64,000 nucleotides of DNA, taken from positions 62,001 through 126,000 of the IMG/VR virus record IMGVR_UViG_3300029258_003221. One strand, 5' to 3'. The notes beneath the pieces are model-generated. The model did not search any database, was not told the DNA's origin, and worked only from the letters and a program-made list of their open reading frames with translations. Made by a program: the position numbers and the translations under genes. This document shows positions 10,068 to 60,583 of this stretch, piece by piece (positions within the stretch are counted from its first letter, which is position 1; the number at the start of each line of letters is the position of its first letter).

Positions 10068-10109
10068 ATAAAAAAAGCCGCACAAGTTTAACCTTGTACG
10101 GCTTTGTTT
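10068..10109 (-). terminator. intrinsic terminator
   Basis: AAAGCCGCACAAG/CTTGTACGGCTTT stem with a T-tract on the minus strand. Confidence 0.7.
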
Positions 10110-10123
10110 CATTTGAGTTTCTG

Positions 10124-10732: not shown

Positions 10733-10783
10733 AAATTTCTCCAAAATTTTTAGTCGTTAAGGTCCGTCTTTTTTATGTATGCA

Positions 10784-11395: not shown

Positions 11396-11424
11396 AGGCT
11401 AATAGAGAAAGAATAGACTATATT

Positions 11425-11619
11425 ATGACAAGTGAACGGGAAAAAGCAGAGCTTGGAGCAGCGACACTTCAAACTTTTTTAGAGCAATTTGGCAATGATG
11501 CACATGCTCAAATTGTGCTTGAAATTCTGTTCGAGGAGCTAATGAATGAGAAGACTGTATCTATACTTAGCCAGCAGGAGCAAGAAGGGGATCAAGCTGA
11601 TAACGATACTCCAGAGTAA
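11425..11619 (+). CDS. small hypothetical protein
   Basis: ORF directly after ACTATATT; overlaps the next gene. Confidence 0.35.
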   Translation: MTSEREKAELGAATLQTFLEQFGNDAHAQIVLEILFEELMNEKTVSILSQQEQEGDQADNDTPE

Positions 11620-11911
11620 TGAATCTGTTGCCAGATCTTCAATTACAGATTTGAGAACTTTTGATTTACCTCCAGTTTGGCAAAGAGAAATTCAGCAAAT
11701 CATCCATGATAATCGCATGTTATATGAGCCGATTATGGAATCGGCCAATAATTACAATGAACTTCGTGAAAGACTAAAAGTTCGTGGGTATACGAACTTG
11801 CCAATGGGCGCATCCCAAATGATCAATGTGTTGAAATACGGGCGTCCACCCAGTGCCAATGTCAGTAGTGTAAAATCAAGAAAAATAATGCTGCAAAAAA
11901 GAAAGAATTGA
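11546..11911 (+). CDS. basic hypothetical protein
   Basis: GAGGAG RBS; abuts the GT2-GT9 gene. Confidence 0.7.
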   Translation: MRRLYLYLASRSKKGIKLITILQSNESVARSSITDLRTFDLPPVWQREIQQIIHDNRMLYEPIMESANNYNELRERLKVRGYTNLPMGASQMINVLKYGRPPSANVSSVKSRKIMLQKRKN

Positions 11912-14466: not shown

Positions 14467-14469
14467 AAT
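14441..14469 (+). promoter_or_regulatory. sigma70-type promoter for ALDH
   Basis: TTGACC-17 nt-TAGAAT. Confidence 0.6.
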
Positions 14470-14490
14470 TAAATAAACCTAAGAAAGGAA

Positions 14491-16901: not shown

Positions 16902-17756
16902 TTACTCCTGTGTATCCTCAAAGAAACTAATGATCTCAGTTTCTTTTTCTATATATTGAGCATTTGAATATTCTGCGCAACTAGAATGGTCAGCAATCTC
17001 AACATCTTCTCTTTGTTTATACCAAAATAGATTTGCATCTATGATTTTTTGGCTCTTCAATTGTTGTGGATAAGTCCACAATCCATTAGGAAGTTTTTCT
17101 GCTGCTGACCTTTCGTTTTCAAAAGAATCATCACAACAAAATAACATTAGTTTCTTGGTTTTAAATTGTGCAGCAATTCCTATCGCTGCACAAATGGGAT
17201 TTCTGTAGTCATCAATGTGATATTTTGCTGAATAAGGTGAGCCGAAATCTTTTTGTTGAGATGGTTCGTAAAAATAAGCCTGACCATGGTAATTGTCTAA
17301 AAACTCAGGGCAAGTTCTAATAGATGACACGCATACAGGGTAGTATCTTGTTAAGGAAGGGAGATATTTGGTGCATTCACTATAAGGATTGTTGACAATG
17401 TACAAATTAATTGGTTTAGGATCTTCTCCTAAATGCAAATTCCATTTCGCTAAAGCTCCATTTGTAGCAATTACCGCTACGTCTTGAGGGATCTTTCGAA
17501 GCATTTTGCTTTTGTTTTCAAAGTCATATCCATCAGAAACAATAATGATTTTGTTGAACCAAATCTCTTCTTCATCTATGTTTTGAAGATTTCTTGATCT
17601 ATTAGAAATTTCATTTTTAAGAAGCTTTTGGTATTCTTTTTCGCTGAACATTTTGTTGATGTCAATATGTGGAACACCCTTGTTGTTGAAGTTACGCACC
17701 CAAATTCCATCAGCGTTGATATACTCGTTTCTGTCTTTGCTTTTCTTAATTCTCAT
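16902..17756 (-). CDS. DUF115/Maf/MptE-like Rossmann-fold protein (putative sugar transferase)
   Basis: IIIVSDGYDF, IATNGAL, AAIGIAAQFKTKKLMLFCCD pattern. Confidence 0.55.
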   Translation of the reverse strand: MRIKKSKDRNEYINADGIWVRNFNNKGVPHIDINKMFSEKEYQKLLKNEISNRSRNLQNIDEEEIWFNKIIIVSDGYDFENKSKMLRKIPQDVAVIATNGALAKWNLHLGEDPKPINLYIVNNPYSECTKYLPSLTRYYPVCVSSIRTCPEFLDNYHGQAYFYEPSQQKDFGSPYSAKYHIDDYRNPICAAIGIAAQFKTKKLMLFCCDDSFENERSAAEKLPNGLWTYPQQLKSQKIIDANLFWYKQREDVEIADHSSCAEYSNAQYIEKETEIISFFEDTQE

Positions 17757-18718
17757 TCTTGTCTTTTCTTAAGTTGAAGTCTAATAGTGGATTTTGGAAT
17801 TCCCGTAACTTTAAATATTTCTGTAATGCTTTTTCCGCTATCAAATAGATCATAAATTTTTTGTCGATCAGCGTCTGTTATTTTTCTTCTCTTTTCACCT
17901 TTTCTTTTTCTAACAAATTTTTGAGTAATTCCATTTTGATGAAGTGCAAAACGACTTACTCCTACTTCTTTTTCGATATCTTCCCAATACATCCCTTTTT
18001 CCCGAAGTAGCTTAACCTTTTCAACTATTTCAGGAGTTACTGTTCGGTATGTTTCACGATTAACATTCCCGCCATATTTGTCATCGGCAATTTTAATTCC
18101 TGCTCTGGTTAATTGAGTTTCACTTACGCCAACTGCCTCAGAAATTTCGTTCCATGTCATTCCTTGCTCTCTAAGATTAACCGCTTTTTGTTTTGCCTTT
18201 TTAGTGAGTTTGACAATCTTTCCTTTGCCTTCGTTTTTGTGAAGACCGTTGTGTTCGAGATGTTTGTACACAGCATTTCTACTAACCCCCAACTTTTTTG
18301 CTATTGTGTTTTTGCCAACACCATTTTTTGCCAACTCAATAATTTCTTTGTCTTGTCCTGCCATGCAAATACTAGAACGTTTCCTTCTTGTTTCTTCACT
18401 GTAAACTGGCCTGCCCTCCACATAACGTACAAGATTGTAACCATGTTTTCGATTCCAAGATTTATAATGTTCTATCCAGTGTTCTTCTTTTTCTACAAGA
18501 TTAGACTCATTACATTCTTCTAGGATTTGAAAATCAAAGTTTTTTTCTCCATATTTGTTCCAAGCGTGTTGAAGGTGAGTGTTGTAATGTTCCCCTTTTT
18601 TTAATTGAGGAATATGGTTACTTCTCCACCTGTATTTTATTTGCTTAGAAGACCCTATGTAACGCTTTCCATTTGTCTTATTGATGATGGCATAGATGCC
18701 GCTAATTTTCTTTTTCAT
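17753..18718 (-). CDS. GIY-YIG homing endonuclease with tandem HTH domains
   Basis: GIYAIINKTNGKRYIGSS, HLQHAWNKYGE, GYNL; about four HTH repeats. Confidence 0.92.
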   Translation of the reverse strand: MKKKISGIYAIINKTNGKRYIGSSKQIKYRWRSNHIPQLKKGEHYNTHLQHAWNKYGEKNFDFQILEECNESNLVEKEEHWIEHYKSWNRKHGYNLVRYVEGRPVYSEETRRKRSSICMAGQDKEIIELAKNGVGKNTIAKKLGVSRNAVYKHLEHNGLHKNEGKGKIVKLTKKAKQKAVNLREQGMTWNEISEAVGVSETQLTRAGIKIADDKYGGNVNRETYRTVTPEIVEKVKLLREKGMYWEDIEKEVGVSRFALHQNGITQKFVRKRKGEKRRKITDADRQKIYDLFDSGKSITEIFKVTGIPKSTIRLQLKKRQE

Positions 18719-45615: not shown

Positions 45616-45682
45616 GCTTTTTGTTTCTTAATTATTCAAGACTATTGCTATAGATATAGGCAAGCTAATAGTGGAGATGCAA

Positions 45683-47137
45683 ATGAAAAAGTTTCATGAA
45701 TACATTGAACTCAAAGAAGCAACTGAGGAAAAGAAGTCATCTGGACCTGATCCTTTGAATGCAAAAATAACACTTGGTGATGGCAATGACTATGAGCCAT
45801 TTACAGTAAGTGATGATCCAAATAGTGAAAACTACGGAAAAAACAGAGGTCTTGCCCCAATTATTCGTGCTTTCAAAAAGGGCGGAAACTGGGGTTGGAG
45901 CAAGGATGACAAAACTGGAGAAGACAAACCAGTTAAAATCAGCGGTAAGAAGCTTTACCTGACAGGCGGTGCTGTTCGTGACCACCTTGCAGGCAAGACT
46001 CCCAGAAACATAGAACTCGCCACTAACGCATCTCCTGACGAGGTCTATCATATTCTGAAACAAAACAACTTCACGTTCTCAGATGGTGAAACTAAAGGCA
46101 AGAAAACAAACCAGTTCTCTGTAAAGTCAAAAGATCCAAATGGAAGACCATTTGCATTTGAAATTAATGTTGGTGATGACACATATGAACTGGAAATCTT
46201 CACCAAAACTCCAAAAGGAAGCGAAGAGCCAGAACCCGGCACACAATCGGATGATGCCGCAGGTCGTGATTTCACCATGAATGCTATGTCGATTCTTCTG
46301 TCAACTGACAATGGTGACAACAAAGAACTTCATGATTTCTATGGTGGTATGCACCATTTAGCCAATGGTAAAGTTCAAACGATTGGTGATATGGAAACCA
46401 GTTTTTCTGATGATCCAAAGCGAATGCTGAGATTCGGTAGAATGGTTTCTGGATATGGCGATCCAGCGAAAATTACTGATGATGAAAAAGCAACTGTTCA
46501 AAAACTTGCTTCTTTGATTTCAAAACTTGATCCAAATGATGTTATGGATGATTTTGATAAAGGCATGAAAAAAGATGATTGTGATCCTCGTAAACACCTT
46601 CAGATTTTTGGTGACCTTGGACTTTTAGGTGCAATTTTCCCGGATATGTCCGTAGATGAATCTTTCCCCAAAGAACTCACAGAACTTGGTGACAGAAACA
46701 TGGCTCTTGCTTGGATGTTGCGACACAACCACCCAGCAAGACTTAATGAAATTGGACTCGGTCCAGATGATGAAAAGATTGCTTTCTTGGTTCGCTCTTT
46801 GAATCTTGGGTTGGGACTTGATGAACATATGCTCGATCAGGCAACCACAAGCTTCACTCGATCAGGTGTGTCAGCCAGAAAATTAAAGAAATGGCTGACT
46901 GTTATGGGCAAAGTTGATGAAGGAACAGTCGATGCATTTTTGAAGCATGCTACTTCACCACGAGTCAAAGTTTATGTAATGAAGGATGATGGCTCAGAGG
47001 GTGTTCGAGAAGAGTTTGAAGATCTGTTTGATCCATTCACGGGACAACCGACTAACCATCAAATGCTTGAAAACCGCAAACGTGAAATGGAGTACAAGAA
47101 CTATCTGAAACACGTTGAGTTCTGTAAACCTGCTTAG
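45683..47137 (+). CDS. class II tRNA nucleotidyltransferase (CCA/polyA) homolog with altered catalytic residues
   Basis: YLTGGAVRD, RDFTMNA, DFYGG, DDPKRMLR; the DxD motif reads NIE. Confidence 0.85.
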   Translation: MKKFHEYIELKEATEEKKSSGPDPLNAKITLGDGNDYEPFTVSDDPNSENYGKNRGLAPIIRAFKKGGNWGWSKDDKTGEDKPVKISGKKLYLTGGAVRDHLAGKTPRNIELATNASPDEVYHILKQNNFTFSDGETKGKKTNQFSVKSKDPNGRPFAFEINVGDDTYELEIFTKTPKGSEEPEPGTQSDDAAGRDFTMNAMSILLSTDNGDNKELHDFYGGMHHLANGKVQTIGDMETSFSDDPKRMLRFGRMVSGYGDPAKITDDEKATVQKLASLISKLDPNDVMDDFDKGMKKDDCDPRKHLQIFGDLGLLGAIFPDMSVDESFPKELTELGDRNMALAWMLRHNHPARLNEIGLGPDDEKIAFLVRSLNLGLGLDEHMLDQATTSFTRSGVSARKLKKWLTVMGKVDEGTVDAFLKHATSPRVKVYVMKDDGSEGVREEFEDLFDPFTGQPTNHQMLENRKREMEYKNYLKHVEFCKPA

Positions 47138-47145
47138 GAGAATTG

Positions 47146-47445
47146 ATGAAAACATTTGAACAATGGTTTGAATCAAAACAACGACAATATGAAAGCAAGC
47201 CTTTTCAAAACTTGCGACATTTTTATGGCTTCATGGAAAAATTCTTTCCTGATCTTGATGCAAAAAGCATTGATTTTCATAGGAATCTGCCTGATTTAGA
47301 ACACATGCACGGAGTGTTGAATGGTCCCTTTGGTAGAAAGTGGATCAATTCTGCTCGAAATAAACTGTTTGGAATGGGAGCACGACAGAAAGTAACAGGT
47401 GCCAATGTAGGAAACATAGAATTAGGGCCGAAAGTAATACGATAA
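47146..47445 (+). CDS. small protein with capsid-targeting-like N-terminus
   Basis: Starts MKTFEQWFES; AGGAG RBS. Confidence 0.7.
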   Translation: MKTFEQWFESKQRQYESKPFQNLRHFYGFMEKFFPDLDAKSIDFHRNLPDLEHMHGVLNGPFGRKWINSARNKLFGMGARQKVTGANVGNIELGPKVIR

Positions 47446-47457
47446 AAATCTCAGTCT

Positions 47458-47940
47458 ATGAATTTTAAGAAATGGATAGAATCTGTTTGGTATCACGGCA
47501 CGCAGAGTGGAAATGAAATTCGCCAGTCTGGTCAAATTGATATTTCAACTTCTGGTGGCGGGCAACGTGGTTTAAAAGGCGTTTGGCTCACAAGAGATCC
47601 ATCTTACGCTAATCTTTACGCCAAAGCATCAAGAGAAAATCCCAGACAACCTGAAATTTTACAAGTTGAAGTTCCCGACAACCTCAACATTGCCGATTTT
47701 TATGCTATTCAAAATTCTCTTGGCATAAATGATGCAGAAAGAGCTATGTGGAAATTTGTCGGGTTTGATGTTGATGATTTTGCATCCATGCAACCTGTGC
47801 GTGATATGCAGCCATTTGCTATGACTAAATTACTTCAACAACAAGGGTATGATGGGGCTTTAATTCCAAATACCATACAAAAAGGCGGGGAACCTGAATT
47901 GGTTATTTTTAACCCCGGAAATGTTCGATTGATTGCATAA
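47458..47940 (+). CDS. ADP-ribosyltransferase-like protein (ART-PolyVal type)
   Basis: WYHGT, GVWLT..YA..YA, GYDG, ELVIFNP; starts MNFKKWIES. Confidence 0.7.
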   Translation: MNFKKWIESVWYHGTQSGNEIRQSGQIDISTSGGGQRGLKGVWLTRDPSYANLYAKASRENPRQPEILQVEVPDNLNIADFYAIQNSLGINDAERAMWKFVGFDVDDFASMQPVRDMQPFAMTKLLQQQGYDGALIPNTIQKGGEPELVIFNPGNVRLIA

Positions 47941-47972
47941 AAAAAACCTCGATAAGAAAACTTATCGAGGTT
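47939..47972 (-). terminator. intrinsic terminator between convergent genes
   Basis: Perfect 12-bp stem AACCTCGATAAG/CTTATCGAGGTT with adjacent A/T tract. Confidence 0.8.
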
Positions 47973-47992
47973 ACGATTCTTGCCACAAAAGC

Positions 47993-48418
47993 TTAGCGGA
48001 CAGGTGCTGGAGCTTCGTTGATGTTTGCTTCGGCTGGTTCACTTGCCGGTGCTGGTGCCACTTTCACTGCATTAACAGATTCACTGACTGGTCCAGCAAC
48101 AGATTCTCTGACTGGAGCAGGGGCAGATTCTCTAACTACAGTGTTAGATTTCACAGTTTCTGTTGATCCCGCTGGTGGAAAACAAATTCCATTCTTGCAG
48201 TTCGGTCGAACAACAGGTTTTGACTGGATGACACGTGAGCTTATCACACGTGGCTGGTGATAAATGATTCTGGATGGCTGACACCTGTAATAGGTGCGAC
48301 AGCTATTGTATGTGTAGCAACTGTTAGATCGATAACAGGAGCTAGGACAATTTCCAGCTTCAGCGAACGAAGGCAGCGCAAACAACATCGCTGCCGCCAT
48401 GGTAATTCCAAATTTCAT
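47993..48418 (-). CDS. secreted Cys/Pro/Ala-rich small protein
   Basis: GGAGG RBS, signal peptide ending AEA, CKNGIC motif. Confidence 0.7.
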   Translation of the reverse strand: MKFGITMAAAMLFALPSFAEAGNCPSSCYRSNSCYTYNSCRTYYRCQPSRIIYHQPRVISSRVIQSKPVVRPNCKNGICFPPAGSTETVKSNTVVRESAPAPVRESVAGPVSESVNAVKVAPAPASEPAEANINEAPAPVR

Positions 48419-48616
48419 GTTTTCCTCCGTGGGAGTTTTTGACAAAGAGCCTTTTGCTCTCAACTGTAGTTAGTGGTTCTTAAACAAGAAACCACACGTC
48501 AGTTCAATTTAGTTTGTCCTTTGAGGCACGACAACCCTTCAGCATTGAAATTTTTGATTTATCTGGTAACTTACTCTAAAGAAGATGTGTCTTTAAAAGA
48601 CAATCAGGAGAACACA

Positions 48617-49258
48617 ATGCAAAAATTGCAAATTTTCGATTTTGACGGCACCCTTGTCTTCACGCCTACCGATAACGCAAAAACTCGGAAATTGTTTGAA
48701 GATGAAACTGGCATTCCATGGGTAATTGACAAAAAACTTGCCAGAAAGCTTACAAATCGACTGGGAAGACCCATCACAATGCGTAAGGGATGGTTTGGGC
48801 GCAAAGAAACCCTTGAACCACCACTTGTTCCCAATCCAACACCAGATGAAATGATCAATCGAAGTGTTTGTGATCTTTTTCTACAGTCAAAACAAGACGA
48901 AAATGCTCTAACTGTCATGATGACTGGTCGTCATGAAGGTTTGCGATCTCACGTTCTTCGTATTTTGAATGATGTTGGATTGGTTGACGTAAAATATGAA
49001 GATGGCAAAGCAATTCAAACTGATTCCGATGTCGTTTGCTATTTAAATGGCAATAATGGTCCAGCTCCAGAGATCGTTGGACAAAAGCCGCATGAAACAC
49101 ATCCATGGAAAATCTGGATTCTCGAACAGCTCATTCATGTTGGAAATTATGATTTGATTGAGATTTGGGAAGATCGTAAGAAGTATATCAAACCATTTGA
49201 AGAATTTGGTGAAAGTATTGAAGAGGACTTTGTCGTTCACTTTGTGGAGGGAAATTGA
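48617..49258 (+). CDS. HAD phosphatase, Swiss-Army-Knife RNA-repair type (HAD_SAK_1-like)
   Basis: FDFDGTL, MTGR, K, IWEDR; AGGAG RBS. Confidence 0.8.
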   Translation: MQKLQIFDFDGTLVFTPTDNAKTRKLFEDETGIPWVIDKKLARKLTNRLGRPITMRKGWFGRKETLEPPLVPNPTPDEMINRSVCDLFLQSKQDENALTVMMTGRHEGLRSHVLRILNDVGLVDVKYEDGKAIQTDSDVVCYLNGNNGPAPEIVGQKPHETHPWKIWILEQLIHVGNYDLIEIWEDRKKYIKPFEEFGESIEEDFVVHFVEGN

Positions 49259-49566
49259 GAAACGATTGGTTAAAACGAAGTTGGAAATTACATTGTTGGA
49301 CAGATAGACTTGTTTTACACATTTGCAAAGGTCCATATAGATATTCAGTGCCTGTTGATTCATTGCGGCATCTTAGAAATCAATTTGGCCTTAGTCCTAT
49401 AATTGAACTTGCATATACTGCAAAAACACAACTTATTGGAGGTTCATTTGGGCTTCCTTCAAGGGCAAGTGTTTCAAAAGAAGAATTTCAAAAGATCATT
49501 AAAGTCATTCATTCATTTAATGAAACGGTTGATGGGAAAATTATTCCCTGTCCACAATGGCCTTAA
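49255..49566 (+). CDS. hypothetical protein
   Basis: Coupled start (TTGA overlap) after GGAGG. Confidence 0.55.
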   Translation: MRNDWLKRSWKLHCWTDRLVLHICKGPYRYSVPVDSLRHLRNQFGLSPIIELAYTAKTQLIGGSFGLPSRASVSKEEFQKIIKVIHSFNETVDGKIIPCPQWP

Positions 49567-50084
49567 TCATCCCATGGCATTTTCGAACGCCGGATTTGAT
49601 CTGGCGTTATATCACTTTGCCAACGCTGAAACATATTTTGAATTGCATCTTTTGGTACGCCATGTTTATTGCGTTGTGCTAAAACTTCAGCAGCCGAATC
49701 TAAGGCCGATTGATCCTTTCTGCTCATTGCATCTTTGATGTTGTTCCAAATATCACTTTGTGGTTCTTGGATTCTAATATCATAGTCAAATTTGTCAGCA
49801 AGTAAAACATAGGGTTTTGCTTCCCAAGCTTCGATATTTGTATTGTCTACAATAATTGGAGAAACGCTTTTCTTCATAGCTTCTGCGACACGATTCACAT
49901 TCCATTGATGAGCTTCAGGTAATTTTTCTGGATCAAAGTTATATTCTTTTCCAAAAAAATCATCAGTGGAAAAAGATTGCCCACCTAAAGTTTGAGAGAT
50001 CGTTGACTTTCCTGTGCCACTCGGGCCACGAATGATGTAAACGATCTTCTCAACATCTTCTAACCATGTACGGAATGAGTTCAT
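49563..50084 (-). CDS. N4BP2/CNPase-like P-loop polynucleotide kinase (AAA_33)
   Basis: IRGPSGTGKST, STDDFF, IVDNTN..WE..PY, RNKHGVP; starts MNSFRTWLED. Confidence 0.88.
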   Translation of the reverse strand: MNSFRTWLEDVEKIVYIIRGPSGTGKSTISQTLGGQSFSTDDFFGKEYNFDPEKLPEAHQWNVNRVAEAMKKSVSPIIVDNTNIEAWEAKPYVLLADKFDYDIRIQEPQSDIWNNIKDAMSRKDQSALDSAAEVLAQRNKHGVPKDAIQNMFQRWQSDITPDQIRRSKMPWDD

Positions 50085-50347
50085 TTGCCCACAGGTGCTA
50101 CAGGTTTACAGTTTTTCTTCGATGCTGTGACTTTGAATGGCCAGACAGTTCCCATATGACCGCAAGGATCTTTGTAGTCATCGCTCATATCCTTACGGAC
50201 ATCACGAGCACCCGCAAATTTCTCTTTGTGATTGATCTTTTTCTTTTTGTCACCACAGTCACTTTCATTTACCTTCCAAGCCACTGTGCCATCTTCTGAA
50301 ATGTCAATCAAATCCTTCTCTTCACACCAGTTTACGAAATCTCGCAT
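50081..50347 (-). CDS. small protein with capsid-targeting-like N-terminus
   Basis: Starts MRDFVNWCEE; AGGAGG RBS; TCTATATA upstream. Confidence 0.65.
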   Translation of the reverse strand: MRDFVNWCEEKDLIDISEDGTVAWKVNESDCGDKKKKINHKEKFAGARDVRKDMSDDYKDPCGHMGTVWPFKVTASKKNCKPVAPVGK

Positions 50348-50393
50348 TGTTAATTTCCTCCTGCTTTATATAGAGTGAAATCACTGTTTTTGC

Positions 50394-50422
50394 TTTACAG
50401 TCCACGTTTTTCAACGTAGAAT
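50394..50422 (+). promoter_or_regulatory. sigma70-type promoter
   Basis: TTTACA-17 nt-TAGAAT. Confidence 0.6.
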
Positions 50423-50463
50423 CATGATGAATCAATTGAAAGGCAATTTGCCAAGGAATCATC

Positions 50464-53460
50464 ATGGAACCCGGATACTACCGATACATCAAACCTCTCA
50501 ATGAGCTAGAAGAAGATGGCTGTGAAATTGGGCAACTTTGGTATTTGCTCAATGTTTATGGGGATGTTGTGGAAGCAGTCCGTGGCTCTTCAACATGGGA
50601 ATTCAATTTTGAAGACTTTGAGGATTGCTTTGAATTCGCCCCAGAAGGACTCATGGAACGACAAAATGAGTTCGTGCAGGCCACAAACGAAATGCATCAG
50701 ATCGGCAGCAAAGCCGATACACTACGCATTGCCACAAGCCATGTTCCGGCTATCGAAATGCATTCTGAAAAACCTGAAGATGTTGAGTTTTCAACTGAAA
50801 CTCAGGAACCTATTGATCCCGGCACGGAAATCTCAGTGCCTAATACAAAAGATCTTGCAACCGTAAAGACAAACATCAAACGGTCAAAGTCTCTTGCCGC
50901 CAGAGTAAAAAAGCAAGTTGCCAAAAAACAAACCGCCCTCAAAGAGTTCATGGAAGAACAGGCGATTATTCTTAGAGCTAAGACTCATGCTCTGTCTAAG
51001 GTCGTAAAACAAGCTGAACAAGCCATCTACGTCCTCAATGCCTATCTGGGACAGGATGAAGAGATTATTCAGATTGCTGATGGCGAGCCTGCACCTGCTG
51101 ATACAAAAATTGTAATGCGGCAGCTTGTTCTGTTTATGGATGAAGAATGTGCTGCTGCCAACAATCTTGCCAAAAGAGGTGGTATTGATTTTCAAAACAT
51201 CAATGAGTTTGGTGAATGGGTTTGTAACCCCGATCACCTCAAACAAGTCTTGCCTGAAGAAAAAGGTGTCGTTGCTATTAAGCCAAGACGCAATGAAAAG
51301 TTTTATTCAGACAACCCTTTAGAAAATCAGGCACTTAACAGAGAAAATAAATGCCTTTATATTCTGATTCGCAACGGTGAAAAATTGTTTCGAATTTACA
51401 CAACCCTTTGGCTTCAGGATGTGTTCTTCCCACGGAAAGATGAGTTTGAACATCACTTCTATGATCGTTGGGATCGTGACAAAAAGTATCGCCCCGGTTC
51501 TAAAGCTTACATGCAGGCCATGGAAGCTGTTGAGGATGACCAACGTCGTTACTATACCGTTCTAATCCTTCTTCAGGGTCTTTTGGATCGAACTAAAGTC
51601 TTTGAGCCAATTCCTGAAACGGCTGCACGAATCAATCTGCTCAACCTTCATGAGTCAGAAAAACATGTGACGTTTCTGTATGATGCAGAGATGATCCTTG
51701 GTGATGGTCGCCCTTCATACTCAGATTGGCACGAAGAAGCCAATTCAACTATTGATATTGGTTGTCGGGTCATCCTTGAAGATGCACCTTATCCAAGTGA
51801 ACACGACCGCAAAAGAATATATCCGAAATACGCACGCCGACCAGACCTTCTGGCCCTTCATAGAATTGAAAAAAGAGATGATGAAGAAGGGTGGTTCAAA
51901 TTCTATTACTCCCGAGAAGGAGAAACTGTGTATCATGGTTGGGGTGATTTCGAAGGGCAACCTGCTAAAAACAGAGCTAGTTATCTTATAGATGTCAATG
52001 ACCCATTTGTGCTCAATTTTGATGCTGTGACTATTGAGGAAATGGAATACTACCTCAATAGTCGCCTGCACCGACATGAGTATGAAAACATGGTGCCCTT
52101 GATGAAAAGGGCCATTGAACTCAAGAAAGAAGAAGCCAAAGCTGAAGCTCCGTTTTGTCAGTTGCTTATTGGCGAAATTATCAAGAAACATAAAGTTTCT
52201 ATTGATGAAGCAGAGACCAGAATCGATGAACTCATCAAATGGTGGAAGTTCAAGAATCGTAACCACCGAGCACTCAGTGAAGATGATGCCAAGGCAATCC
52301 GTATGATTGTCTCCGAATTCGGAAAAAGACAAAAGTTAGACGAAGCCAGTGACCGTTTACAGAAACTGCACGACGATATTGTTGAACAACTTCGGGACAG
52401 TGAACCAAACTCTCTTTCGATCTGGCACAAAAAAGACAATCAGTATGCTGTCTATCTTTGGCACAATGACCGCAATGTCTTTGTGACTGAGGAGATTTGG
52501 GAACTCAAAAAACATCAACTTTCATGTGTCTCACAGAAAGAGTGGAAAGTCGTTGATGCTCGACATGAAGGGTGGAATTGCCTTTGGAAGCATGATCGAT
52601 GGGATGAATGGGAAATTGGTGCCCTTGCCAATGACCATCTCACCGATCCTGAATTGGTTGAAGCATTCGACTTTGGACTGAAGGCTGTTGCAGACCTCCA
52701 GTTTTATGAAAACAACAGAGACAAGAAAGGTCGTCTCTGGCGTGTACCGCTTTGTGCCATGTTGAACACATCAGGCAATGTCAAAATCTATTTCCTGAAA
52801 CGACATGCTTATATCCCCAAAAAGAACATTCTTTCAGACAGCGCCAATACTGCAAGCATTGGTATGCTTCAAGTCAATTGGGAAAAGAAACGAACTGGCG
52901 TTACTCATCGAATCAAAAACCAGAGTAACCATGTAATTGAATGGGGAAATTTGCCTTGGTCAGAAGATTTCGATGATCGGTATCGTCGTGGTGAACCTCT
53001 GTATGTTCACAAAGTCTATGAAAAGAACATCGAAAAAGCCAGAGCCGAAAATGAAAAGGTGATGGAGTTTCGCCGTGAAGTTAGGAAACTCACAGAACCA
53101 CTGAGAAACCTTAATTCTCAGGTGCGTGAAGCTATGATTGAAGTGTTTTACAGAGAAGAGAAGGAAAAGTTTGACGAACAATACTTTGATGAAGATGGTG
53201 ATCTCTGGGAAGATCATAAAGAAGAACTCAAGAAACCTGAATACCCCAGATGGGTAAATGATGCGGCTGCTCTTCTTGTGGAGCGTAACATTGATGTCAA
53301 TGGTATGTCTCTTGAAGAAATGGTTTCAAAAGCCAAAAAGTTTGAATTTGAGTTTAGATCTGATTTCGAGGAAGACTGGTTTAATAAAGTCAAAGATTTT
53401 GTTTTGGAGGTTAATCCTGTTGACATCGACGACGATGATGACTTCGATGAAGATTGGTAA
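50464..53460 (+). CDS. 998-aa hypothetical protein (coiled coils, acidic C-terminus)
   Basis: Long ORF with AAGGA RBS; no recognised catalytic motif. Confidence 0.8.
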   Translation: MEPGYYRYIKPLNELEEDGCEIGQLWYLLNVYGDVVEAVRGSSTWEFNFEDFEDCFEFAPEGLMERQNEFVQATNEMHQIGSKADTLRIATSHVPAIEMHSEKPEDVEFSTETQEPIDPGTEISVPNTKDLATVKTNIKRSKSLAARVKKQVAKKQTALKEFMEEQAIILRAKTHALSKVVKQAEQAIYVLNAYLGQDEEIIQIADGEPAPADTKIVMRQLVLFMDEECAAANNLAKRGGIDFQNINEFGEWVCNPDHLKQVLPEEKGVVAIKPRRNEKFYSDNPLENQALNRENKCLYILIRNGEKLFRIYTTLWLQDVFFPRKDEFEHHFYDRWDRDKKYRPGSKAYMQAMEAVEDDQRRYYTVLILLQGLLDRTKVFEPIPETAARINLLNLHESEKHVTFLYDAEMILGDGRPSYSDWHEEANSTIDIGCRVILEDAPYPSEHDRKRIYPKYARRPDLLALHRIEKRDDEEGWFKFYYSREGETVYHGWGDFEGQPAKNRASYLIDVNDPFVLNFDAVTIEEMEYYLNSRLHRHEYENMVPLMKRAIELKKEEAKAEAPFCQLLIGEIIKKHKVSIDEAETRIDELIKWWKFKNRNHRALSEDDAKAIRMIVSEFGKRQKLDEASDRLQKLHDDIVEQLRDSEPNSLSIWHKKDNQYAVYLWHNDRNVFVTEEIWELKKHQLSCVSQKEWKVVDARHEGWNCLWKHDRWDEWEIGALANDHLTDPELVEAFDFGLKAVADLQFYENNRDKKGRLWRVPLCAMLNTSGNVKIYFLKRHAYIPKKNILSDSANTASIGMLQVNWEKKRTGVTHRIKNQSNHVIEWGNLPWSEDFDDRYRRGEPLYVHKVYEKNIEKARAENEKVMEFRREVRKLTEPLRNLNSQVREAMIEVFYREEKEKFDEQYFDEDGDLWEDHKEELKKPEYPRWVNDAAALLVERNIDVNGMSLEEMVSKAKKFEFEFRSDFEEDWFNKVKDFVLEVNPVDIDDDDDFDEDW

Positions 53461-53509
53461 ACTTTACGCTATTACCATGTAGATAAAATAGCTTGTAAGG
53501 AGAAAAGCT

Positions 53510-54229
53510 ATGCGAAAAGCTGCATTGTATGTTCACGGACGTGTTGTTGTCGCTGATAGTCATCTGGCAGCATTTCAAGCACTAACCATCGAAGAACGTC
53601 GTGAATACATAGTATCAGGATTTATTGATGATGAAACGGGTGAGTTCGACAGCGATCTTGCCCGTGATCATTTTTACAATAAGGAAATTTATCTTGTTAG
53701 ACATGGCGAGGTAGAAAACAAAGATGCTCCTGATCCTCCTATTACAGAAATAGGAATCGAACAAGCAGAATGTGTAGCTGAAGAATTAACAGATGTAGAT
53801 CTTTCTGGGTTTACCTGTCGCACAAGTCCTTATCTTCGTTGTCTTCAAACAGCACAGGTTTTCTCAAGAATTTGCAATCTTGAATTTACGGTTGATCTTT
53901 CTTTGATGGAAACTCCTATGTTCCTTTCAAATAATCAATCTTTCAGATTGAAGAATCGCCACAAAGAATTCCCTCAGTTCAATTGGCCCACTAACCATGA
54001 TTGGCTGATTCCTTTTGAGGGAAAAAACAAATTCGCTGTTCGTGTCAAAAACGTATTGCAGGATTTGCCTATCCATAGCATTCTAATATCACATTTTGGC
54101 GTAATCACAAATATGGCCAGCATGGCTTTGTGTGACGAAAAGGCAATGGAATATGGCGTTCCAACTGCATCTCTCACACACATAGACAATCAAGAAGTTA
54201 AATGTCTGGGTTGGACTTGCAAAAATTGA
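53510..54229 (+). CDS. histidine phosphatase family protein
   Basis: YLVRHGE, TSPYLRCLQTA, ISHFGVI. Confidence 0.88.
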   Translation: MRKAALYVHGRVVVADSHLAAFQALTIEERREYIVSGFIDDETGEFDSDLARDHFYNKEIYLVRHGEVENKDAPDPPITEIGIEQAECVAEELTDVDLSGFTCRTSPYLRCLQTAQVFSRICNLEFTVDLSLMETPMFLSNNQSFRLKNRHKEFPQFNWPTNHDWLIPFEGKNKFAVRVKNVLQDLPIHSILISHFGVITNMASMALCDEKAMEYGVPTASLTHIDNQEVKCLGWTCKN

Positions 54230-59079: not shown

Positions 59080-59328
59080 ATGTGTCTTGGGAATTGTTTG
59101 TGTTGGTCAGTGATTATGTGGTTTATCCACGGTGGAAAGATCATGACCACTGAGCATGAACTGGGAGAACAAGGTAGGAACATACGACATTTTGTCCTCA
59201 AAGATCGAACAGGAAAGTTGAGACACTTCAAGAGAGTGTTTGACTTCCTACCTCCACCTTTGTGTTACCTTGTCTTCATCGGGAAATTTGAAACGTCTGG
59301 GAACAAAGGCCGAAAGAGACATGTTTAA
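59080..59328 (+). CDS. hypothetical protein
   Basis: Operonic ORF. Confidence 0.55.
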   Translation: MCLGNCLCWSVIMWFIHGGKIMTTEHELGEQGRNIRHFVLKDRTGKLRHFKRVFDFLPPPLCYLVFIGKFETSGNKGRKRHV

Positions 59329-59560
59329 TCTGAAACCAACTGATCTTGTAGAAGATCGTCGAATAAAGAAGGTCTTCCCAAAAGTTGGTGACACAGAGAG
59401 ATACTCTGGTATTTTCGGTGAGGTCATTAAAGTCACCAAAACAGGATTCAGAGTTCAGTGGTTTGATGATTATGAAATGGGATACAGTTGGGGGGTTTTT
59501 GGCAATGATGCCATAGCAAAGGTTGAAGCACGAAGAAGGGCGAGTAGCTCAGTTGGTTAG
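59321..59560 (+). CDS. small SH3-like hypothetical protein whose 3' end overlaps the tRNA
   Basis: KVGD..GEVIKV..RVQW; TAG stop lies in the tRNA D-arm. Confidence 0.55.
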   Translation: MFNLKPTDLVEDRRIKKVFPKVGDTERYSGIFGEVIKVTKTGFRVQWFDDYEMGYSWGVFGNDAIAKVEARRRASSSVG

Positions 59561-59851
59561 AGCAGAGAACTTAAAGGAAAAAAGATCTAAACATCTTTTT
59601 GTATGATCTTTTTTCGTTGGGTTGCCTTTGGTTTTCAATTGGAGACCTTTGGTAGAATTCGTCAAATTCGGGGAAGGCTAAACTCAAATGAGCATGCTAA
59701 TCCCGAGCCAAGCCCGAAAGGGAAGGTGTAGAGGCCAGACGGCGAACCCGAAAGGGAAGGGATGGTCCAGACTACAAACCCGAAAGGGGCAGCGAAAGCT
59801 GTAGTAGTAAGCATAATTCTTTGGTCGGGGGTTCGAGTCCCTCCTCGCCCA
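59538..59851 (+). tRNA. tRNA with CAT anticodon (Ile2 or elongator Met), intron-split; exons 59538-59571 and 59812-59851
   Basis: Acceptor GGGCGAG/CTCGCCC, D-arm GCTC/GAGC, anticodon arm GAGAA-CT|CATAA-TTCTT, T-loop TTCGAGT, discriminator A, no encoded CCA. Confidence 0.92.
59572..59811 (+). ncRNA. 240-nt group I self-splicing intron (IC3-like, no ORF)
   Basis: Follows U33 and ends in G; P (AAATTCGGGGA), Q (AATCCCGAG), R (TAGAGGCCA), S (AAGGGATGGTCC); GAAA tetraloop hairpins; guide GGTT pairs with exon AACT. Confidence 0.9.
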
Positions 59852-59915
59852 TTTTGGACTTGATATTGCAAAATCAACAAAGTAAACTTTGGCTTTACAA
59901 TTGAAAGGAGTCAAC

Positions 59916-60014
59916 ATGTGGAGTTTGGAAATCCTCATTGCTTTGAATGAAAAGCAAGCAAGAAAAGAACAAGAAAAGAAACGCAAAGAAGAGAAGAAAC
60001 AAGCAGTTGCCTGA
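59916..60014 (+). CDS. 32-aa charged peptide MWSLEILIALNEKQARKEQEKKRKEEKKQAVA
   Basis: GAAAGGAG RBS; TTGATA-17 nt-TAAACT upstream; not in the ORF track. Confidence 0.6.
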   Translation: MWSLEILIALNEKQARKEQEKKRKEEKKQAVA

Positions 60015-60025
60015 AAGGAATTAAA

Positions 60026-60583
60026 ATGAACACCGCTCTTGCAATAATCGTGAGTGGGTGGATAGGGCAATTTCCTGTCTACGAATACTGCCCTCCTGTC
60101 ATTGTGTGTCCTCCCGTTGTTGAAACCATACCGCCAGCTCCAGAAATTCGGTGGCGTTTTCATATGAAGAAAAGTGATGTCTTTGAAGCAACAAAAATTG
60201 ACATCATCACCCCTCATGGAGAAGTCTATCAAGATGTTTGGGTGCTCAATGGATACCTCCCCCAAATCACCACCGAAAAAGACAAATGGGGAAGACCAAA
60301 AGTAAGACACTTTTGGTATGGAGCAAAAAGAAAACACAACGGAAAGAAAGTGGTTAGGTATTATCACGCCAAAGAACAAAGCATTGTCCGTGATTATCCA
60401 AAGCCTGACAGTTTCGCACCCGCACCATCACGTGACACAAGTTCCAGAAAAGCTCCACCTGTGGAAAGGGATTTGCCCCCATTGCCACCAGAACACAGGC
60501 CAGCACCAGCATTGATTCTTCCTTCTGAAGAACAAGTTCCGTCCGAAGATGATTCTCACCTGTTTCGTGACTTAGACGAATAA
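60026..60583 (+). CDS. Pro-rich hypothetical protein, probably exported
   Basis: AAGGA RBS; short hydrophobic leader. Confidence 0.65.
   Translation: MNTALAIIVSGWIGQFPVYEYCPPVIVCPPVVETIPPAPEIRWRFHMKKSDVFEATKIDIITPHGEVYQDVWVLNGYLPQITTEKDKWGRPKVRHFWYGAKRKHNGKKVVRYYHAKEQSIVRDYPKPDSFAPAPSRDTSSRKAPPVERDLPPLPPEHRPAPALILPSEEQVPSEDDSHLFRDLDE

What the first reader, a model, noticed from the sequence alone, without database searches (positions are those of the whole stretch)
59538..59851. Phage tRNA(CAU) split by a compact group I intron just before the anticodon
Seen: a 240-nt ORF-less intron between U33 and C34. P7 is the variant GGCCA/TGGTC, there are three CCCGAAAGGG hairpins, and P1 has a long AU-rich extension (GAAAAAAGATC...GATCTTTTTTC). 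Known: this site is used by cyanobacterial tRNA-fMet introns, whereas the Azoarcus tRNA-Ile(CAU) intron lies after the anticodon. This tRNA has paired G1-C72 and no GGG/CCC anticodon stem, so it is not an initiator (Ile2 favoured, elongator Met possible). Intron-bearing tRNAs in phages are rarely reported and are missed by standard scans. Inference: splicing may time tRNA supply or hide the anticodon loop from nucleases.
Basis: partly seen in the sequence, partly recalled or inferred. Interest (0 to 1): 0.8.

Follow-up and report, generated by a model that had tools for sequence, protein, structure and literature searches.

The report
Self-splicing intron inside phage tRNA gene
The intron belongs to a family already known from bacterial tRNA genes, so the mechanism is ordinary, but such split tRNAs prove common in phage DNA and invisible to routine annotation.

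Summary
Window 59538-59851 (+) is a tRNA gene cut between U33 (59571) and C34 (59812) by a 240-nt group I (IC3) intron with no homing-endonuclease ORF. Default ARAGORN and Rfam gathering scans miss it. Joining the exons gives a canonical 74-nt cloverleaf with anticodon CAU.

The intron fold (P1-P9, P3/P7 pseudoknot, U33·G wobble, terminal G) is backed by strong covariation in two alignments. A profile built only from bacterial relatives matches the window end to end (E 1.6e-48).

The same intron family at the same site occurs in at least 120 bacterial species. It sits in initiator tRNA-fMet genes (some with an I-Ssp6803I-type endonuclease) and in tRNA-Ile2-type genes. It also occurs in 26 further viral contigs. 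The window's intron groups with Planctomycetia tRNA-Ile2-type introns; one of these lies directly upstream of tilS.

The tRNA is not an initiator. Ile2 is favoured (about 0.65-0.7) and elongator Met stays possible. No RNA data show splicing, and the proposed timing or anti-nuclease role is untested.

Verdict: a real feature and a new member of a known kind. Its wider value is that intron-split tRNAs are widespread in phage contigs, and I found no report of them in the literature I could search.

The parts
59538..59851 (+). Complete split tRNA(CAU) gene: exon 1, intron, exon 2. No CCA is encoded.
   Evidence: ARAGORN -i gives 59538-59851 with a 240-nt intron. The spliced form is a canonical cloverleaf with anticodon CAT.
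59538..59571 (+). Exon 1: acceptor 5' strand GGGCGAG, D arm, anticodon-stem 5' strand GAGAA, C32, U33.
   Evidence: Direct reading. A DNA contig in run X2 joins 59571 directly to 59812; it is an intron-less homologue.
59572..59811 (+). Group I (IC3) intron, 240 nt, with no homing-endonuclease ORF. It ends in the terminal G (omega G) at 59811.
   Evidence: Rfam RF00028 40.6 bits, E 5e-9. nhmmer with a bacterial-only profile gives E 1.6e-48 end to end. Covariation.
59812..59851 (+). Exon 2: C34 A35 U36 A37 A38, anticodon-stem 3' strand UUCUU, variable loop UGGUC, T arm, acceptor 3' strand, A73.
   Evidence: RNAalifold pairs the exon flanks as the anticodon stem, with covariation.
59568..59623 (+). 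P1. Exon A30 A31 C32 U33 plus intron U A A (59568-59574) pair with the guide sequence UUGGGUU (59617-59623). U33 (59571) forms a wobble with G59620, which marks the 5' splice site.
   Evidence: MFE fold. This pair is U·G in 28 of 29 aligned family members, and C32-G in 29 of 29.
59577..59615 (+). P1 extension hairpin (P1a): 11 bp (59577-87 with 59605-15) and a 17-nt loop. The stem top plus loop reads UCUAAA...UAUGA, which resembles the 11-nt GAAA-tetraloop receptor.
   Evidence: The homologous hairpin has different, compensating sequences in bacterial Ile2-type introns. The receptor role is inferred only.
59624..59653 (+). P2: GCC/GGU base, UUU/UUU internal loop, GGUUUUC/GGAGACC stem, AAUU loop (not a GNRA loop).
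   Evidence: MFE fold. Covariation in helices 2-3.
59658..59746 (+). P3 (59658-63 with 59741-46). It encloses the P4-P6 domain and the P7 5' strand.
   Evidence: All 6 pairs show compensatory changes across 32 viral introns, with 97.9% of cells paired.
59667..59726 (+). P4 (59667-72/59702-07), P5 (76-78/96-98), P5a (83-85/90-92), P6 (08-09/25-26) and P6a CCCGAAAGGG (59713-22).
   Evidence: A ~90%-identical environmental variant has compensatory changes at 59684/59691 and 59715/59720.
59733..59767 (+). P7 (guanosine-binding helix): GGCCA 59733-37 with UGGUC 59763-67. It crosses P3 to form the pseudoknot. P8, CCCGAAAGGG at 59747-56, lies between the two strands.
   Evidence: P7 is paired in 98.8-100% of cells, and pairs 4 and 5 covary. 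The invariant G-C and C-G pairs are kept in the window.
59771..59808 (+). P9 three-way junction: P9 (59771-75/59804-08), P9a CCCGAAAGGG (59779-88) and P9b CAGC-GAAA-GCUG (59790-59801).
   Evidence: Compensatory changes at 59780/59787 and 59793/59798 in the X9 variant.
45671..47137 (+). Phage-encoded tRNA nucleotidyltransferase (CCA-adding enzyme family). Either it or the host enzyme must add the CCA that the gene lacks.
   Evidence: phrog_2244 E 6.5e-27. TIGR02692 E 8e-27, below its cut-off. The functional link to this tRNA is inferred.
59321..59560 (+). Upstream small CDS (79 aa). Its last 23 nt overlap the 5' end of the tRNA, so the tRNA lies inside a + strand transcription unit.
   Evidence: ORF list and reading. 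No dedicated promoter or terminator stands out.

Best explanation

Proposed pathway:
1. The tRNA is co-transcribed with its + strand neighbours (inferred).
2. The acceptor, D and T arms and the anticodon stem fold.
3. Exon bases A30-U33 pair with the guide sequence GGUU (59620-23), giving the U33·G59620 wobble.
4. A free guanosine bound in P7 attacks after 59571.
5. The terminal G59811 then occupies the same pocket, and U33 attacks before 59812. This ligates the loop CUCAUAA.
6. End trimming and CCA addition follow, by a phage or host enzyme, because the gene lacks CCA.
7. Most likely, host TilS then lysidinylates C34, giving a tRNA-Ile2 that reads AUA (10.7 per 1000 phage codons).

The intron has no endonuclease gene. 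It is best seen as a near-neutral passenger that entered the phage lineage together with, or from, a bacterial tRNA-Ile2-type gene, and persists because it splices itself out.

What is shown: the anatomy, the junction logic, family membership, conservation of the fold, and the nearest relatives. What is inferred: actual splicing, Ile2 identity, and neutrality.
For: Anatomy and junction:
- The only pair of cuts that puts a U at the exon end and a G at the intron end, and leaves a 7-nt loop, is 59571|59572 and 59811|59812.
- The product is a canonical cloverleaf.
- An intron-less homologous tRNA gene in DNA run X2 joins exactly these positions.
- RNAalifold pairs the exon flanks as the anticodon stem.

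Ribozyme:
- Rfam RF00028 gives E 5e-9.
- The window keeps all 28 invariant core columns of 32 viral IC3 introns.
- 92.9% of cells pair and 34 of 43 pairs have compensatory changes, against 25-44% paired in slid controls.
- With P1, P1a and P2 included: 89.7% paired, 42 of 71 pairs compensatory, U33·G in 28 of 29 sequences.
- Four compensatory pairs occur in a ~90%-identical environmental variant.

Family:
- The junction motif occurs in 28 viral contigs and in at least 120 bacterial species.
- Of 104 resolved bacterial genes, 67 are fMet-type and 37 others, mostly Ile2-type.
- Long fMet-type members carry a PDDEXK_5 endonuclease.
- A bacterial-only profile hits the window end to end, E 1.6e-48.

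Ile2 identity:
- Not an initiator: G1-C72, C11-G24, and GAA/UUC at 29-31/39-41 (criteria from PMC1635315).
- tRNA positions 8-48 differ from the Burkholderiales intron-bearing tRNA only by the compensating 31:39 pair.
- That Burkholderiales tRNA matches E. coli tRNA-Ile(CAU) at 85.7% over its full length.
- The window tRNA has G27·U43 and U44 like E. coli Ile2 and unlike E. coli Met.
- It has G3:C70 and C4:G69, the B. cenocepacia TilS identity pairs (PMC11947777).
- The intron forms a clade with Planctomycetia introns, SH-aLRT 98. One of these lies directly upstream of tilS.

Phage context:
- Tail and baseplate genes are present, and the locus is interior to a 234,631-bp viral contig.
- The same sequence appears in several assemblies.
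Against: - No RNA evidence of splicing exists. The only RNA run found holds relatives, not this phage.
- The Rfam score is below the curated gathering score (40.6 against 50).
- The usual IC3 L2-tetraloop/P8-receptor contact is absent: L2 is AAUU and P8 is a bare CCCGAAAGGG hairpin. Folding may therefore depend on other contacts or on a protein.
- P10 is weak.
- Ile2 against Met is not settled. Overall identity to E. coli Ile2 (71%) and Met (69%) does not discriminate, and the best E. coli BLAST hit is tRNA-Met.
- E. coli TilS needs C5:G68, but this tRNA has G5:C68.
- TilS rules differ between species and the host is unknown.
- No tilS was found among the window ORFs scanned.
- The tRNA body is only 74% identical to that of the Planctomycetia relatives.
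Confidence: 0.85

Rival explanations
1. The anatomy is the same, but the mature product is an elongator tRNA-Met that reads AUG, not tRNA-Ile2.
For: - ARAGORN names the spliced product tRNA-Met by its anticodon.
- The best E. coli hit is tRNA-Met, 81% over 58 nt.
- The D arm is identical to that of E. coli tRNA-Met.
- G5:C68 differs from the E. coli TilS determinant C5:G68.
- Separating Met from Ile2 generally needs profile methods (PMC1635315), which I could not run.
Against: - The 27:43 pair and position 44 match Ile2, not Met.
- G3:C70 and C4:G69 fit the B. cenocepacia TilS determinants.
- The nearest intron relatives sit in Ile2-type tRNAs, one next to tilS.
- Among 104 bacterial hosts of this intron family, I recognised fMet-type and Ile2-type tRNAs but no clear elongator Met.
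Confidence: 0.27
2. The phage keeps the intron because it is useful. It might delay or gate the supply of the tRNA. It might keep a precursor pool out of reach of host anticodon nucleases. Or it might break the DNA target of tRNA-gene homing endonucleases of the I-Ssp6803I type.
For: - Endonucleases that target this very site exist in the family. An occupied site is immune to them (established for homing systems).
- The window holds a cluster resembling an RNA/tRNA repair kit: a CCA-adding enzyme, a HAD_SAK_1 'RNA repair' domain, an AAA_33 kinase-like protein and a histidine phosphatase. This hints that tRNA damage matters to this phage.
- Intron-split tRNAs recur in many large viral contigs.
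Against: - No experiment or expression data bear on this.
- The mature tRNA has a normal anticodon loop and would be as cleavable as any other.
- The same intron family sits in ordinary bacterial chromosomes.
- The intron can be explained by descent plus self-splicing alone.
Confidence: 0.1
3. The intron no longer splices, so the locus is a dead tRNA gene.
For: - The Rfam score is below gathering.
- P8 and L2 are atypical.
- No RNA evidence exists.
Against: - Every invariant core position is kept.
- The helices are intact.
- A diverged environmental variant changed four pairs in a compensatory way. This indicates selection on the fold.
- Short P8 and P1a are shared by the whole bacterial Ile2-type subfamily.
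Confidence: 0.05
4. It is a tRNA-Leu(UAA) with an intron at the canonical 37/38 position, as ARAGORN -i labels it.
For: ARAGORN -i output.
Against: - ARAGORN assumes a fixed intron position. Its cut leaves an A at the exon end and a T at the intron end, which is incompatible with group I chemistry.
- The tRNA has a 5-nt variable loop, not the long arm of tRNA-Leu.
- Family alignments fix the U33·G wobble and ...GTAAG|CATAA.
Confidence: 0.01

Closest known systems
Group I intron of cyanobacterial initiator tRNA-fMet genes (Synechocystis PCC 6803 type, some encoding the PD-(D/E)XK homing endonuclease I-Ssp6803I)
   Same: - Same subgroup (IC3).
- Same insertion site, U33|C34 of a CAU anticodon loop.
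- Same 3' end motif, ...GAAARCURUAGURGUAAG|CAUAA.
- Same core sequence. Cyanobacterial and many other bacterial fMet genes were retrieved with the window's own junction motif.
- Long members carry PDDEXK_5 endonucleases.
   Different: - The host gene here is not an initiator tRNA (G1-C72, no RGG/YCY stem, C11-G24).
- No endonuclease ORF.
- A P1 extension hairpin is present.
- P8 is reduced to a GAAA hairpin and L2 is not a GNRA loop.
- It resides in a phage.
Group I introns in bacterial tRNA-Ile2(CAU) genes at 33/34 (Burkholderiaceae such as Limnohabitans and Polynucleobacter; Planctomycetia; Saccharibacteria). tRNA-Ile2 introns in Acidovorax and Burkholderia are mentioned in the tRNAscan-SE 2.0 paper (PMC8450103).
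   Same: - Closest relatives by sequence: 75% over about 170-180 nt, and 87% over the last 92 nt.
- Same architecture, including the P1 extension, guide sequence UUGGGUUGC, short P8 and the P9 three-way junction.
- tRNA positions 8-48 are nearly identical.
- The profile match is end to end.
   Different: - Acceptor and T stems differ.
- No CCA is encoded.
- P1a is AU-rich.
- L8 is GAAA rather than GUAAA.
- P7 is GGCCA rather than GACUG or GACCA.
- It is carried by a phage, not a chromosome.
[quoted passage not shown]
   Same: IC3 intron in a CAU tRNA-Ile anticodon loop. It is compact, self-splicing and has no ORF. The J3/4-P4, P6 and J6/7 sequences are very similar.
   Different: - Azoarcus-type introns sit after the anticodon (36/37), and P1 is formed by CAU itself (L097, L074 and L114 types; exon lengths in PMC13168695).
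- They use L2-P8 and L9-P5 tetraloop-receptor contacts.
- They have a different P9 and no P1 extension hairpin.
[quoted passage not shown]
   Same: IC3, in the anticodon loop, with very similar core and P9 sequences. This is the commonest type among the viral contigs I retrieved. It is also present, unannotated, in the cultured jumbo phage Atu_ph07.
   Different: Inserted one base later (U34|A35) in a class II tRNA. It has an L2 GAAA loop and a P8 receptor.
Phage group I introns in protein-coding genes (T4 td/nrdB/sunY, Twort, Bastille, and others)
   Same: Self-splicing group I introns carried by phages.
   Different: These lie in protein-coding genes, are mostly of other subgroups (IA), and often carry endonuclease genes. 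A 2014 review stated that all phage introns then known were in protein-coding genes (PMC3984707).

Membership tests
Group I intron (subgroup IC3) | Conserved core helices P3-P9 with the P3/P7 pseudoknot | tested here: met
   Every helix can be drawn in the window. 92.9% of cells pair and 34 of 43 pairs are compensatory across 32 introns. Slid controls give 25-44%. RNAalifold independently recovers P4, P5, P6, P7 and P9.
Group I intron (subgroup IC3) | U at the end of the 5' exon, wobble-paired to G of the internal guide sequence in P1 | tested here: met
   U33 (59571) pairs with G59620. The pair is U·G in 28 of 29 family members. Neighbouring pairs covary with the exon sequence.
Group I intron (subgroup IC3) | Terminal guanosine (omega G) at the 3' end of the intron, and a P7 guanosine pocket | tested here: met
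   G59811 precedes C34. The invariant G-C and C-G pairs of P7 are kept; the variant pairs are G·U and a compensated C-G.
Group I intron (subgroup IC3) | Score at or above the curated Rfam RF00028 gathering score | tested here: not met
   40.6 bits against 50; E 5.1e-9 on 501 nt; nothing reported at the gathering threshold. This fails a curated annotation cut-off only. All structural features above are met.
Group I intron (subgroup IC3) | GTP-dependent self-splicing | not testable with these tools
   No RNA run holds this phage. An in vitro assay is needed.
CAU-tRNA 33/34 intron family (tRNA-fMet / tRNA-Ile2 introns) | Insertion between U33 and C34 of a CAU anticodon loop | tested here: met
CAU-tRNA 33/34 intron family (tRNA-fMet / tRNA-Ile2 introns) | Full-length sequence homology to family members | tested here: met
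   An nhmmer profile of 23 bacterial members without the window matches HMM positions 2-265 of 267, at 160 bits, E 1.6e-48. The window forms a clade with L153/L188/L247, SH-aLRT 98.
CAU-tRNA 33/34 intron family (tRNA-fMet / tRNA-Ile2 introns) | PD-(D/E)XK (I-Ssp6803I-type) homing endonuclease ORF. This is optional and present only in long members. | tested here: not met
   The window intron is 240 nt with no ORF over 42 aa. Long members encode PDDEXK_5. Most family members (84 of 128) are also 300 nt or shorter.
Bacterial initiator tRNA-fMet | C1xA72 mismatch; R29G30G31/Y39C40Y41 in the anticodon stem; A11-U24 (criteria from PMC1635315) | tested here: not met
   The window has G1-C72, G29A30A31/U39U40C41 and C11-G24. 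It is not an initiator.
tRNA-Ile2 (CAU, lysidine-dependent AUA reader) | CAU anticodon with non-initiator features | tested here: met
tRNA-Ile2 (CAU, lysidine-dependent AUA reader) | TilS identity elements in the acceptor stem (species-specific) | tested here: inconclusive
   G3:C70 and C4:G69, the B. cenocepacia determinants, are present. Of the E. coli determinants, C4:G69 is present but C5:G68 is not (G5:C68) (PMC11947777). The host and its TilS type are unknown.
tRNA-Ile2 (CAU, lysidine-dependent AUA reader) | Closer to known Ile2 than to elongator Met | tested here: inconclusive
   Against E. coli: 71% to Ile2 and 69% to Met overall, but 27:43 (G·U) and U44 match Ile2. Identity to bacterial intron-bearing tRNAs is 78-82%, and those match E. 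coli tRNA-Ile(CAU) at 82-86%. The closest intron relative is adjacent to tilS. tRNAscan-SE isotype models were not available.
tRNA-Ile2 (CAU, lysidine-dependent AUA reader) | Lysidine at C34 and charging with isoleucine | not testable with these tools
   Needs tRNA mass spectrometry or TilS and IleRS assays.

The most novel reading that the evidence does not exclude
Intron-split tRNA genes may be a widespread, so far unreported feature of large phages that selection maintains. The intron would not be a neutral passenger. It could protect the tRNA gene from anticodon-site homing endonucleases, or keep a reserve of uncleavable precursor during attack by host tRNA nucleases. In this lineage the ribozyme may also dock its substrate helix in a new way: the L8 or L9a GAAA loop would bind a receptor-like motif in the P1 extension, replacing the usual L2-P8 contact.
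Probability: 0.12. Interest if true: 0.7.

Novelty: new member of a known kind. Interest (0 to 1): 0.45.

Why it matters
Three points matter.

1. **It corrects a gap in the literature.** A 2014 review stated that all phage group I introns then known lay in protein-coding genes, despite the many phage tRNA genes (PMC3984707). My searches of the held library found no later report of an intron-split phage tRNA. Yet two narrow sequence patterns retrieved about 85 intron-split tRNA genes from viral contigs. They cover at least nine anticodons. A cultured jumbo phage, Agrobacterium phage Atu_ph07, also has one.

2. **These genes escape routine annotation.** Default ARAGORN and Rfam gathering scans miss them, and tRNAscan-SE is not designed to detect them (PMC8450103). 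Phage tRNA repertoires, and codon-usage arguments built on them, are therefore undercounted.

3. **It traces gene flow.** The same intron family links initiator and Ile2 tRNA genes of many bacterial phyla with phage tRNA genes. This gives a traceable marker for tRNA-gene exchange between phages and hosts; here it hints at Planctomycetia-like relatives.

The mechanism itself is textbook group I splicing, so this single locus is not a surprise to a specialist.

Tried and rejected
- **Default scans.** Default ARAGORN and Rfam at gathering find nothing. This is why the locus is unannotated.
- **ARAGORN -i label.** Its tRNA-Leu(UAA) label with an intron at 37/38 was rejected on group I chemistry and tRNA class.
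- **My first P1 model.** I first paired GGUUUUC (59630-36) with exon GAGAACU. I dropped this in favour of UUGGGUU (59617-23) after seeing the conserved GGGUY guide sequence directly before P2 in all family members. GGUUUUC is the 5' strand of P2.
- **My first spliced construct.** The one omitted G1 through an off-by-one error. It was redone correctly.
- **Close relatives and intron-less alleles of the phage.** BLAST against 50,697 GenBank phages gave no close match. The flanking protein found only the same phage in IMG/VR. The metagenome scan returned only identical copies.
- **RNA evidence.** One metatranscriptome held only relatives.
- **tRNA identity by BLAST.** The body resembles a cyanophage tRNA-Arg(UCU) at 85% and E. 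coli tRNA-Met. This is uninformative for isotype.
- **Mis-set query.** The query hit neighbouring tRNA-Ser genes and was discarded.
- **The 998-aa neighbour (50464-53460).** It has no match in PDB sequences, Pfam, PHROGs or the Atlas.
- **Older papers.** The 1994 and 1997 papers on cyanobacterial tRNA introns are not held. I tested their claim directly on genomes instead.
- **Promoter and terminator scan.** No promoter or terminator specific to the tRNA was found.
Full report
**1. What is in the sequence**

Reading window 59300-60100 shows two tRNA halves.
- The 5' half is 59538-59571: acceptor strand GGGCGAG, a D arm, the anticodon-stem strand GAGAA, then C32 U33.
- The 3' half is 59812-59851: CAUAA, the stem strand UUCUU, variable loop UGGUC, a T arm, the acceptor strand CUCGCCC, and A73. 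No CCA is encoded.
- Between them lie 240 nt, 59572-59811.

Default ARAGORN finds no tRNA in the 64-kb window. Rfam at gathering thresholds reports nothing. ARAGORN with its intron option finds one gene at exactly 59538-59851 with a 240-nt intron. It labels the gene Leu(UAA) because it assumes an intron at 37/38.

Group I chemistry needs a U at the end of the 5' exon and a G at the end of the intron. Only the cuts 59571|59572 and 59811|59812 satisfy this and leave a 7-nt loop. Joined, the exons fold as a canonical 74-nt cloverleaf with anticodon CAU. My first spliced construct omitted G1 by mistake.

- three CCCGAAAGGG hairpins at 59713, 59747 and 59779;
- P7 as GGCCA/UGGUC;
- the GAAAAAAGAUC/GAUCUUUUUUC arms.

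**2. It is a group I intron**

With permissive thresholds, Rfam Intron_gpI matches 59614-59754 at 40.6 bits, E 5e-9 for the 501 nt searched. This is below the curated score of 50.

I drew the fold by comparison with relatives:
- P1: 59568-74 with 59617-23, with U33·G59620 at the splice site;
- an 11-bp P1 extension: 59577-87 with 59605-15;
- P2: 59624-53;
- P3: 59658-63 with 59741-46;
- P4-P6: 59667-59726;
- P7: 59733-37 with 59763-67;
- P8: 59747-56;
- a P9 three-way junction: 59771-59808;
- the terminal G at 59811.

Covariation supports this fold.
- On 32 IC3 introns from viral contigs, 92.9% of cells form pairs and 34 of 43 pairs show compensatory changes. Slid controls give 25-44%.
- On 29 sequences that include P1, its extension and P2, the figures are 89.7% and 42 of 71 pairs. 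The splice-site pair is U·G in 28 of 29.
- RNAalifold, run without my structure, recovers P4, P5, P6, P7, P9, P9a and P9b. It also recovers the anticodon-stem pairing of the exon flanks.
- The window keeps all 28 invariant columns of the 32-sequence alignment.

**3. Evidence from reads**

Only DNA runs (seawater and sediment metagenomes) hold the locus. The single RNA run holds relatives only. There is therefore no direct evidence of splicing. Two useful facts came out.
- A DNA contig in run X2 joins 59571 directly to 59812, with six mismatches in the exons. It is a natural intron-less homologue of the predicted product.
- A contig in run X9 is about 90% identical over 59639-59853. It carries paired changes at 59684/59691, 59715/59720, 59780/59787 and 59793/59798. 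Each turns a C-G or U-A pair into another standard pair, in P5a, P6a, P9a and P9b. This indicates selection on the fold in this lineage.

**4. The genome is a phage**

The window is 100% identical to IMGVR_UViG_3300029258_003221 (234,631 bp) and to a 55.7-kb contig from another sample. The tRNA lies near position 121.5 kb of the large contig. The window encodes:
- baseplate and tail proteins (Tail_P2_I, Phage_base_V, PKD);
- a primase-like Toprim protein and a PD-(D/E)XK nuclease;
- a CCA-adding enzyme.

There is no close relative among GenBank phages.

**5. Relatives and family**

About 60 of them are intron-split tRNAs. Most are Leu(UAA) at 34/35. Others are Arg(CCU) at 36/37, Arg(UCU), Lys(UUU), Lys(CUU), Asn(GUU), Gln(UUG), Ile(UAU) and CAU tRNAs at 36/37. 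Many sit in tRNA arrays.
- The window's own 3' junction motif occurs in 28 viral contigs. These give 14 distinct introns, all in CAU tRNAs cut at 33/34.
- The same motif occurs in at least 120 bacterial species. Of 104 resolved genes, 67 are initiator-type (CGCGGG..., RGG/YCY stem). They come from cyanobacteria, Planctomycetia, Omnitrophota, Saprospiraceae, Nitrospirae and others.
- The other 37 are mostly of a GGGCC... type with G27·U43.
- The long initiator-type introns (600-700 nt) encode PDDEXK_5 endonucleases, E 1e-47 to 1e-51.
- The GGGCC... type matches E. coli tRNA-Ile with anticodon CAU at 85.7% over its full length. It is therefore tRNA-Ile2. The tRNAscan-SE 2.0 paper mentions such introns in Acidovorax and Burkholderia and notes that the program does not detect them (PMC8450103).

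**6. Where the window's intron belongs**

- Its best matches are the bacterial Ile2-type introns: L153 at 87% over the last 92 nt, and the Burkholderiales ones at 75% over 169 nt.
- They share the P1 extension hairpin with compensating sequences, the guide sequence UUGGGUUGC, a short P8 and the P9 junction.
- A profile built from the 23 bacterial sequences alone matches the window once, from exon flank to exon flank, at 160 bits, E 1.6e-48.
- In a tree of 120 introns, the window groups with three Planctomycetia MAG introns (SH-aLRT 98). The other viral-contig introns form a separate group.
- In L153 the intron-bearing tRNA lies directly upstream of tilS (TIGR02432, 174 bits against a cut-off of 93.6), among ordinary chromosomal genes.

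**7. Which tRNA it is**

It is not an initiator. It has G1-C72, C11-G24, and GAA/UUC instead of RGG/YCY (criteria from PMC1635315).

For Ile2:
- positions 8-48 differ from the Burkholderiales Ile2-type tRNA only by the compensating 31:39 pair;
- G27·U43 and U44 match E. coli Ile2 and not Met;
- G3:C70 and C4:G69 match the B. cenocepacia TilS determinants (PMC11947777);
- the intron's relatives and the tilS context point the same way.

Against:
- overall identity to E. coli Ile2 and Met is equal (71% against 69%);
- the E. coli determinant C5:G68 is absent;
- TilS rules are species-specific and the host is unknown.

AUA makes up 10.7 per 1000 codons and 16% of Ile codons in 24 long ORFs, so an AUA reader would be useful. 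I put Ile2 at about 0.65-0.7.

**8. How it most likely works**

The sequence of events is standard group I splicing within a pre-tRNA, followed by end processing, CCA addition and, probably, lysidine formation. The best-explanation section gives the steps.

Several tertiary features are inferred only. The usual L2 GAAA / P8 receptor contact is missing in this subfamily. The P1 extension carries UCUAAA...UAUGA, which resembles the 11-nt GAAA receptor, and four GAAA loops are available. The substrate helix may therefore be docked through its extension.

The intron has no endonuclease gene. I see no need for an adaptive explanation; descent with a self-splicing passenger suffices. The window does hold a cluster resembling an RNA repair kit at 45.6-54.2 kb.

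**9. Novelty**

The mechanism, the subgroup, the insertion site and the association with CAU tRNAs are all known from bacteria. What is new is the carrier.

A 2014 review stated that all phage group I introns then known were in protein-coding genes (PMC3984707). Ten literature searches found no later report of one in a phage tRNA. This covers only the held library.

The data here show that such genes are common in viral contigs. They are also present, unannotated, in GenBank phages:
- huge phages LR756508 (L001, tRNA-Lys(UUU)) and LR756501/503;
- the cultured Agrobacterium phage Atu_ph07, tRNA-Leu(UAA) with a 278-nt intron.

I rate this locus a new member of a known kind, of moderate interest.

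Noticed in passing
window 6676-8802 (-): An actin-like protein (Pfam Volactin, E 1e-59) is interrupted by an intein with a LAGLIDADG endonuclease domain (Hint_2, Intein_splicing, LAGLIDADG_3). It is a second self-splicing selfish element in the same phage.
   Followed up: no
window 17753-18718 (-): A free-standing GIY-YIG nuclease with several HTH domains, resembling a Seg-type homing endonuclease.
   Followed up: no
window 45671-54229 (mostly +): A cluster resembling an RNA/tRNA repair kit. It holds a CCA-adding tRNA nucleotidyltransferase (45671-47137) and a weak ART-PolyVal hit (47458-47940). It also holds a HAD_SAK_1 'Swiss Army Knife RNA repair' domain (48473-49258) and an AAA_33 kinase-like protein (49563-50084, - strand). 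A 998-aa protein with no detectable relatives (50464-53460) and a histidine phosphatase (53510-54229) complete it.
   Followed up: partly
window 59321-59560 (+): A plausible 79-aa CDS runs 23 nt into the 5' end of the tRNA gene. RNase P cleavage of a shared transcript would therefore remove its last codons and stop codon. Cyanophage S-T4 shows a similar 10-nt overlap.
   Followed up: no
window 59586-59610: The top of the P1 extension reads UCUAAA...UAUGA. Bacterial relatives have CCUAAA...CAUGG there. This is close to the 11-nt GAAA tetraloop receptor (CCUAAG...UAUGG). In the same subfamily P8 has lost its receptor and L2 its GNRA loop. A swapped tertiary contact is possible.
   Followed up: partly
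L001:425-690 (LR756508, 484-kb uncultured huge phage): A tRNA-Lys(UUU) split at U34|U35 by a related IC3 intron lies next to an intact tRNA. A partial HEARO RNA match sits at L001:1220-1282.
   Followed up: partly
L276:360-721 (Agrobacterium phage Atu_ph07, MF403008.1 around 112.9-113.2 kb): A cultured jumbo phage has a tRNA-Leu(UAA) with a 278-nt IC3 intron at 34/35. The GenBank record annotates only hypothetical proteins there. It is a tractable model.
   Followed up: yes
L004-L122 (IMG/VR contigs): About 60 intron-split tRNA genes of many isotypes, often inside tRNA arrays. They include Leu(UAA), Arg(CCU), Arg(UCU), Lys(UUU), Lys(CUU), Asn(GUU), Gln(UUG), Ile(UAU) and CAU tRNAs. Insertion sites range from 33/34 to 36/37. 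ARAGORN mislabels most anticodons.
   Followed up: partly
L153:2814-4305 (-) (Planctomycetia MAG JANNNN010000554.1): An intron-bearing tRNA(CAU) lies immediately upstream of tilS on the same strand, so the substrate gene and its modification enzyme are adjacent.
   Followed up: yes
H58, Pelagibacter phage HTVC120P MH598807.1 19653-19807: An IC3-like intron core lies under an annotated capsid protein gene. The capsid gene may be intron-split.
   Followed up: no
window 9052-15975 (both strands): Glycosyltransferases (GT2, GT9-like) on both strands and, on the + strand, a full-length aldehyde dehydrogenase (Aldedh, E 1e-126). These are auxiliary metabolic genes in a phage.
   Followed up: no
L148:301-377 (Synechococcus phage S-T4) and L149: The window tRNA's acceptor and T arms are 82-85% identical to cyanophage tRNA-Arg(UCU) genes. 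Phage tRNA bodies are shared across isotypes, so BLAST similarity is a poor guide to identity.
   Followed up: yes
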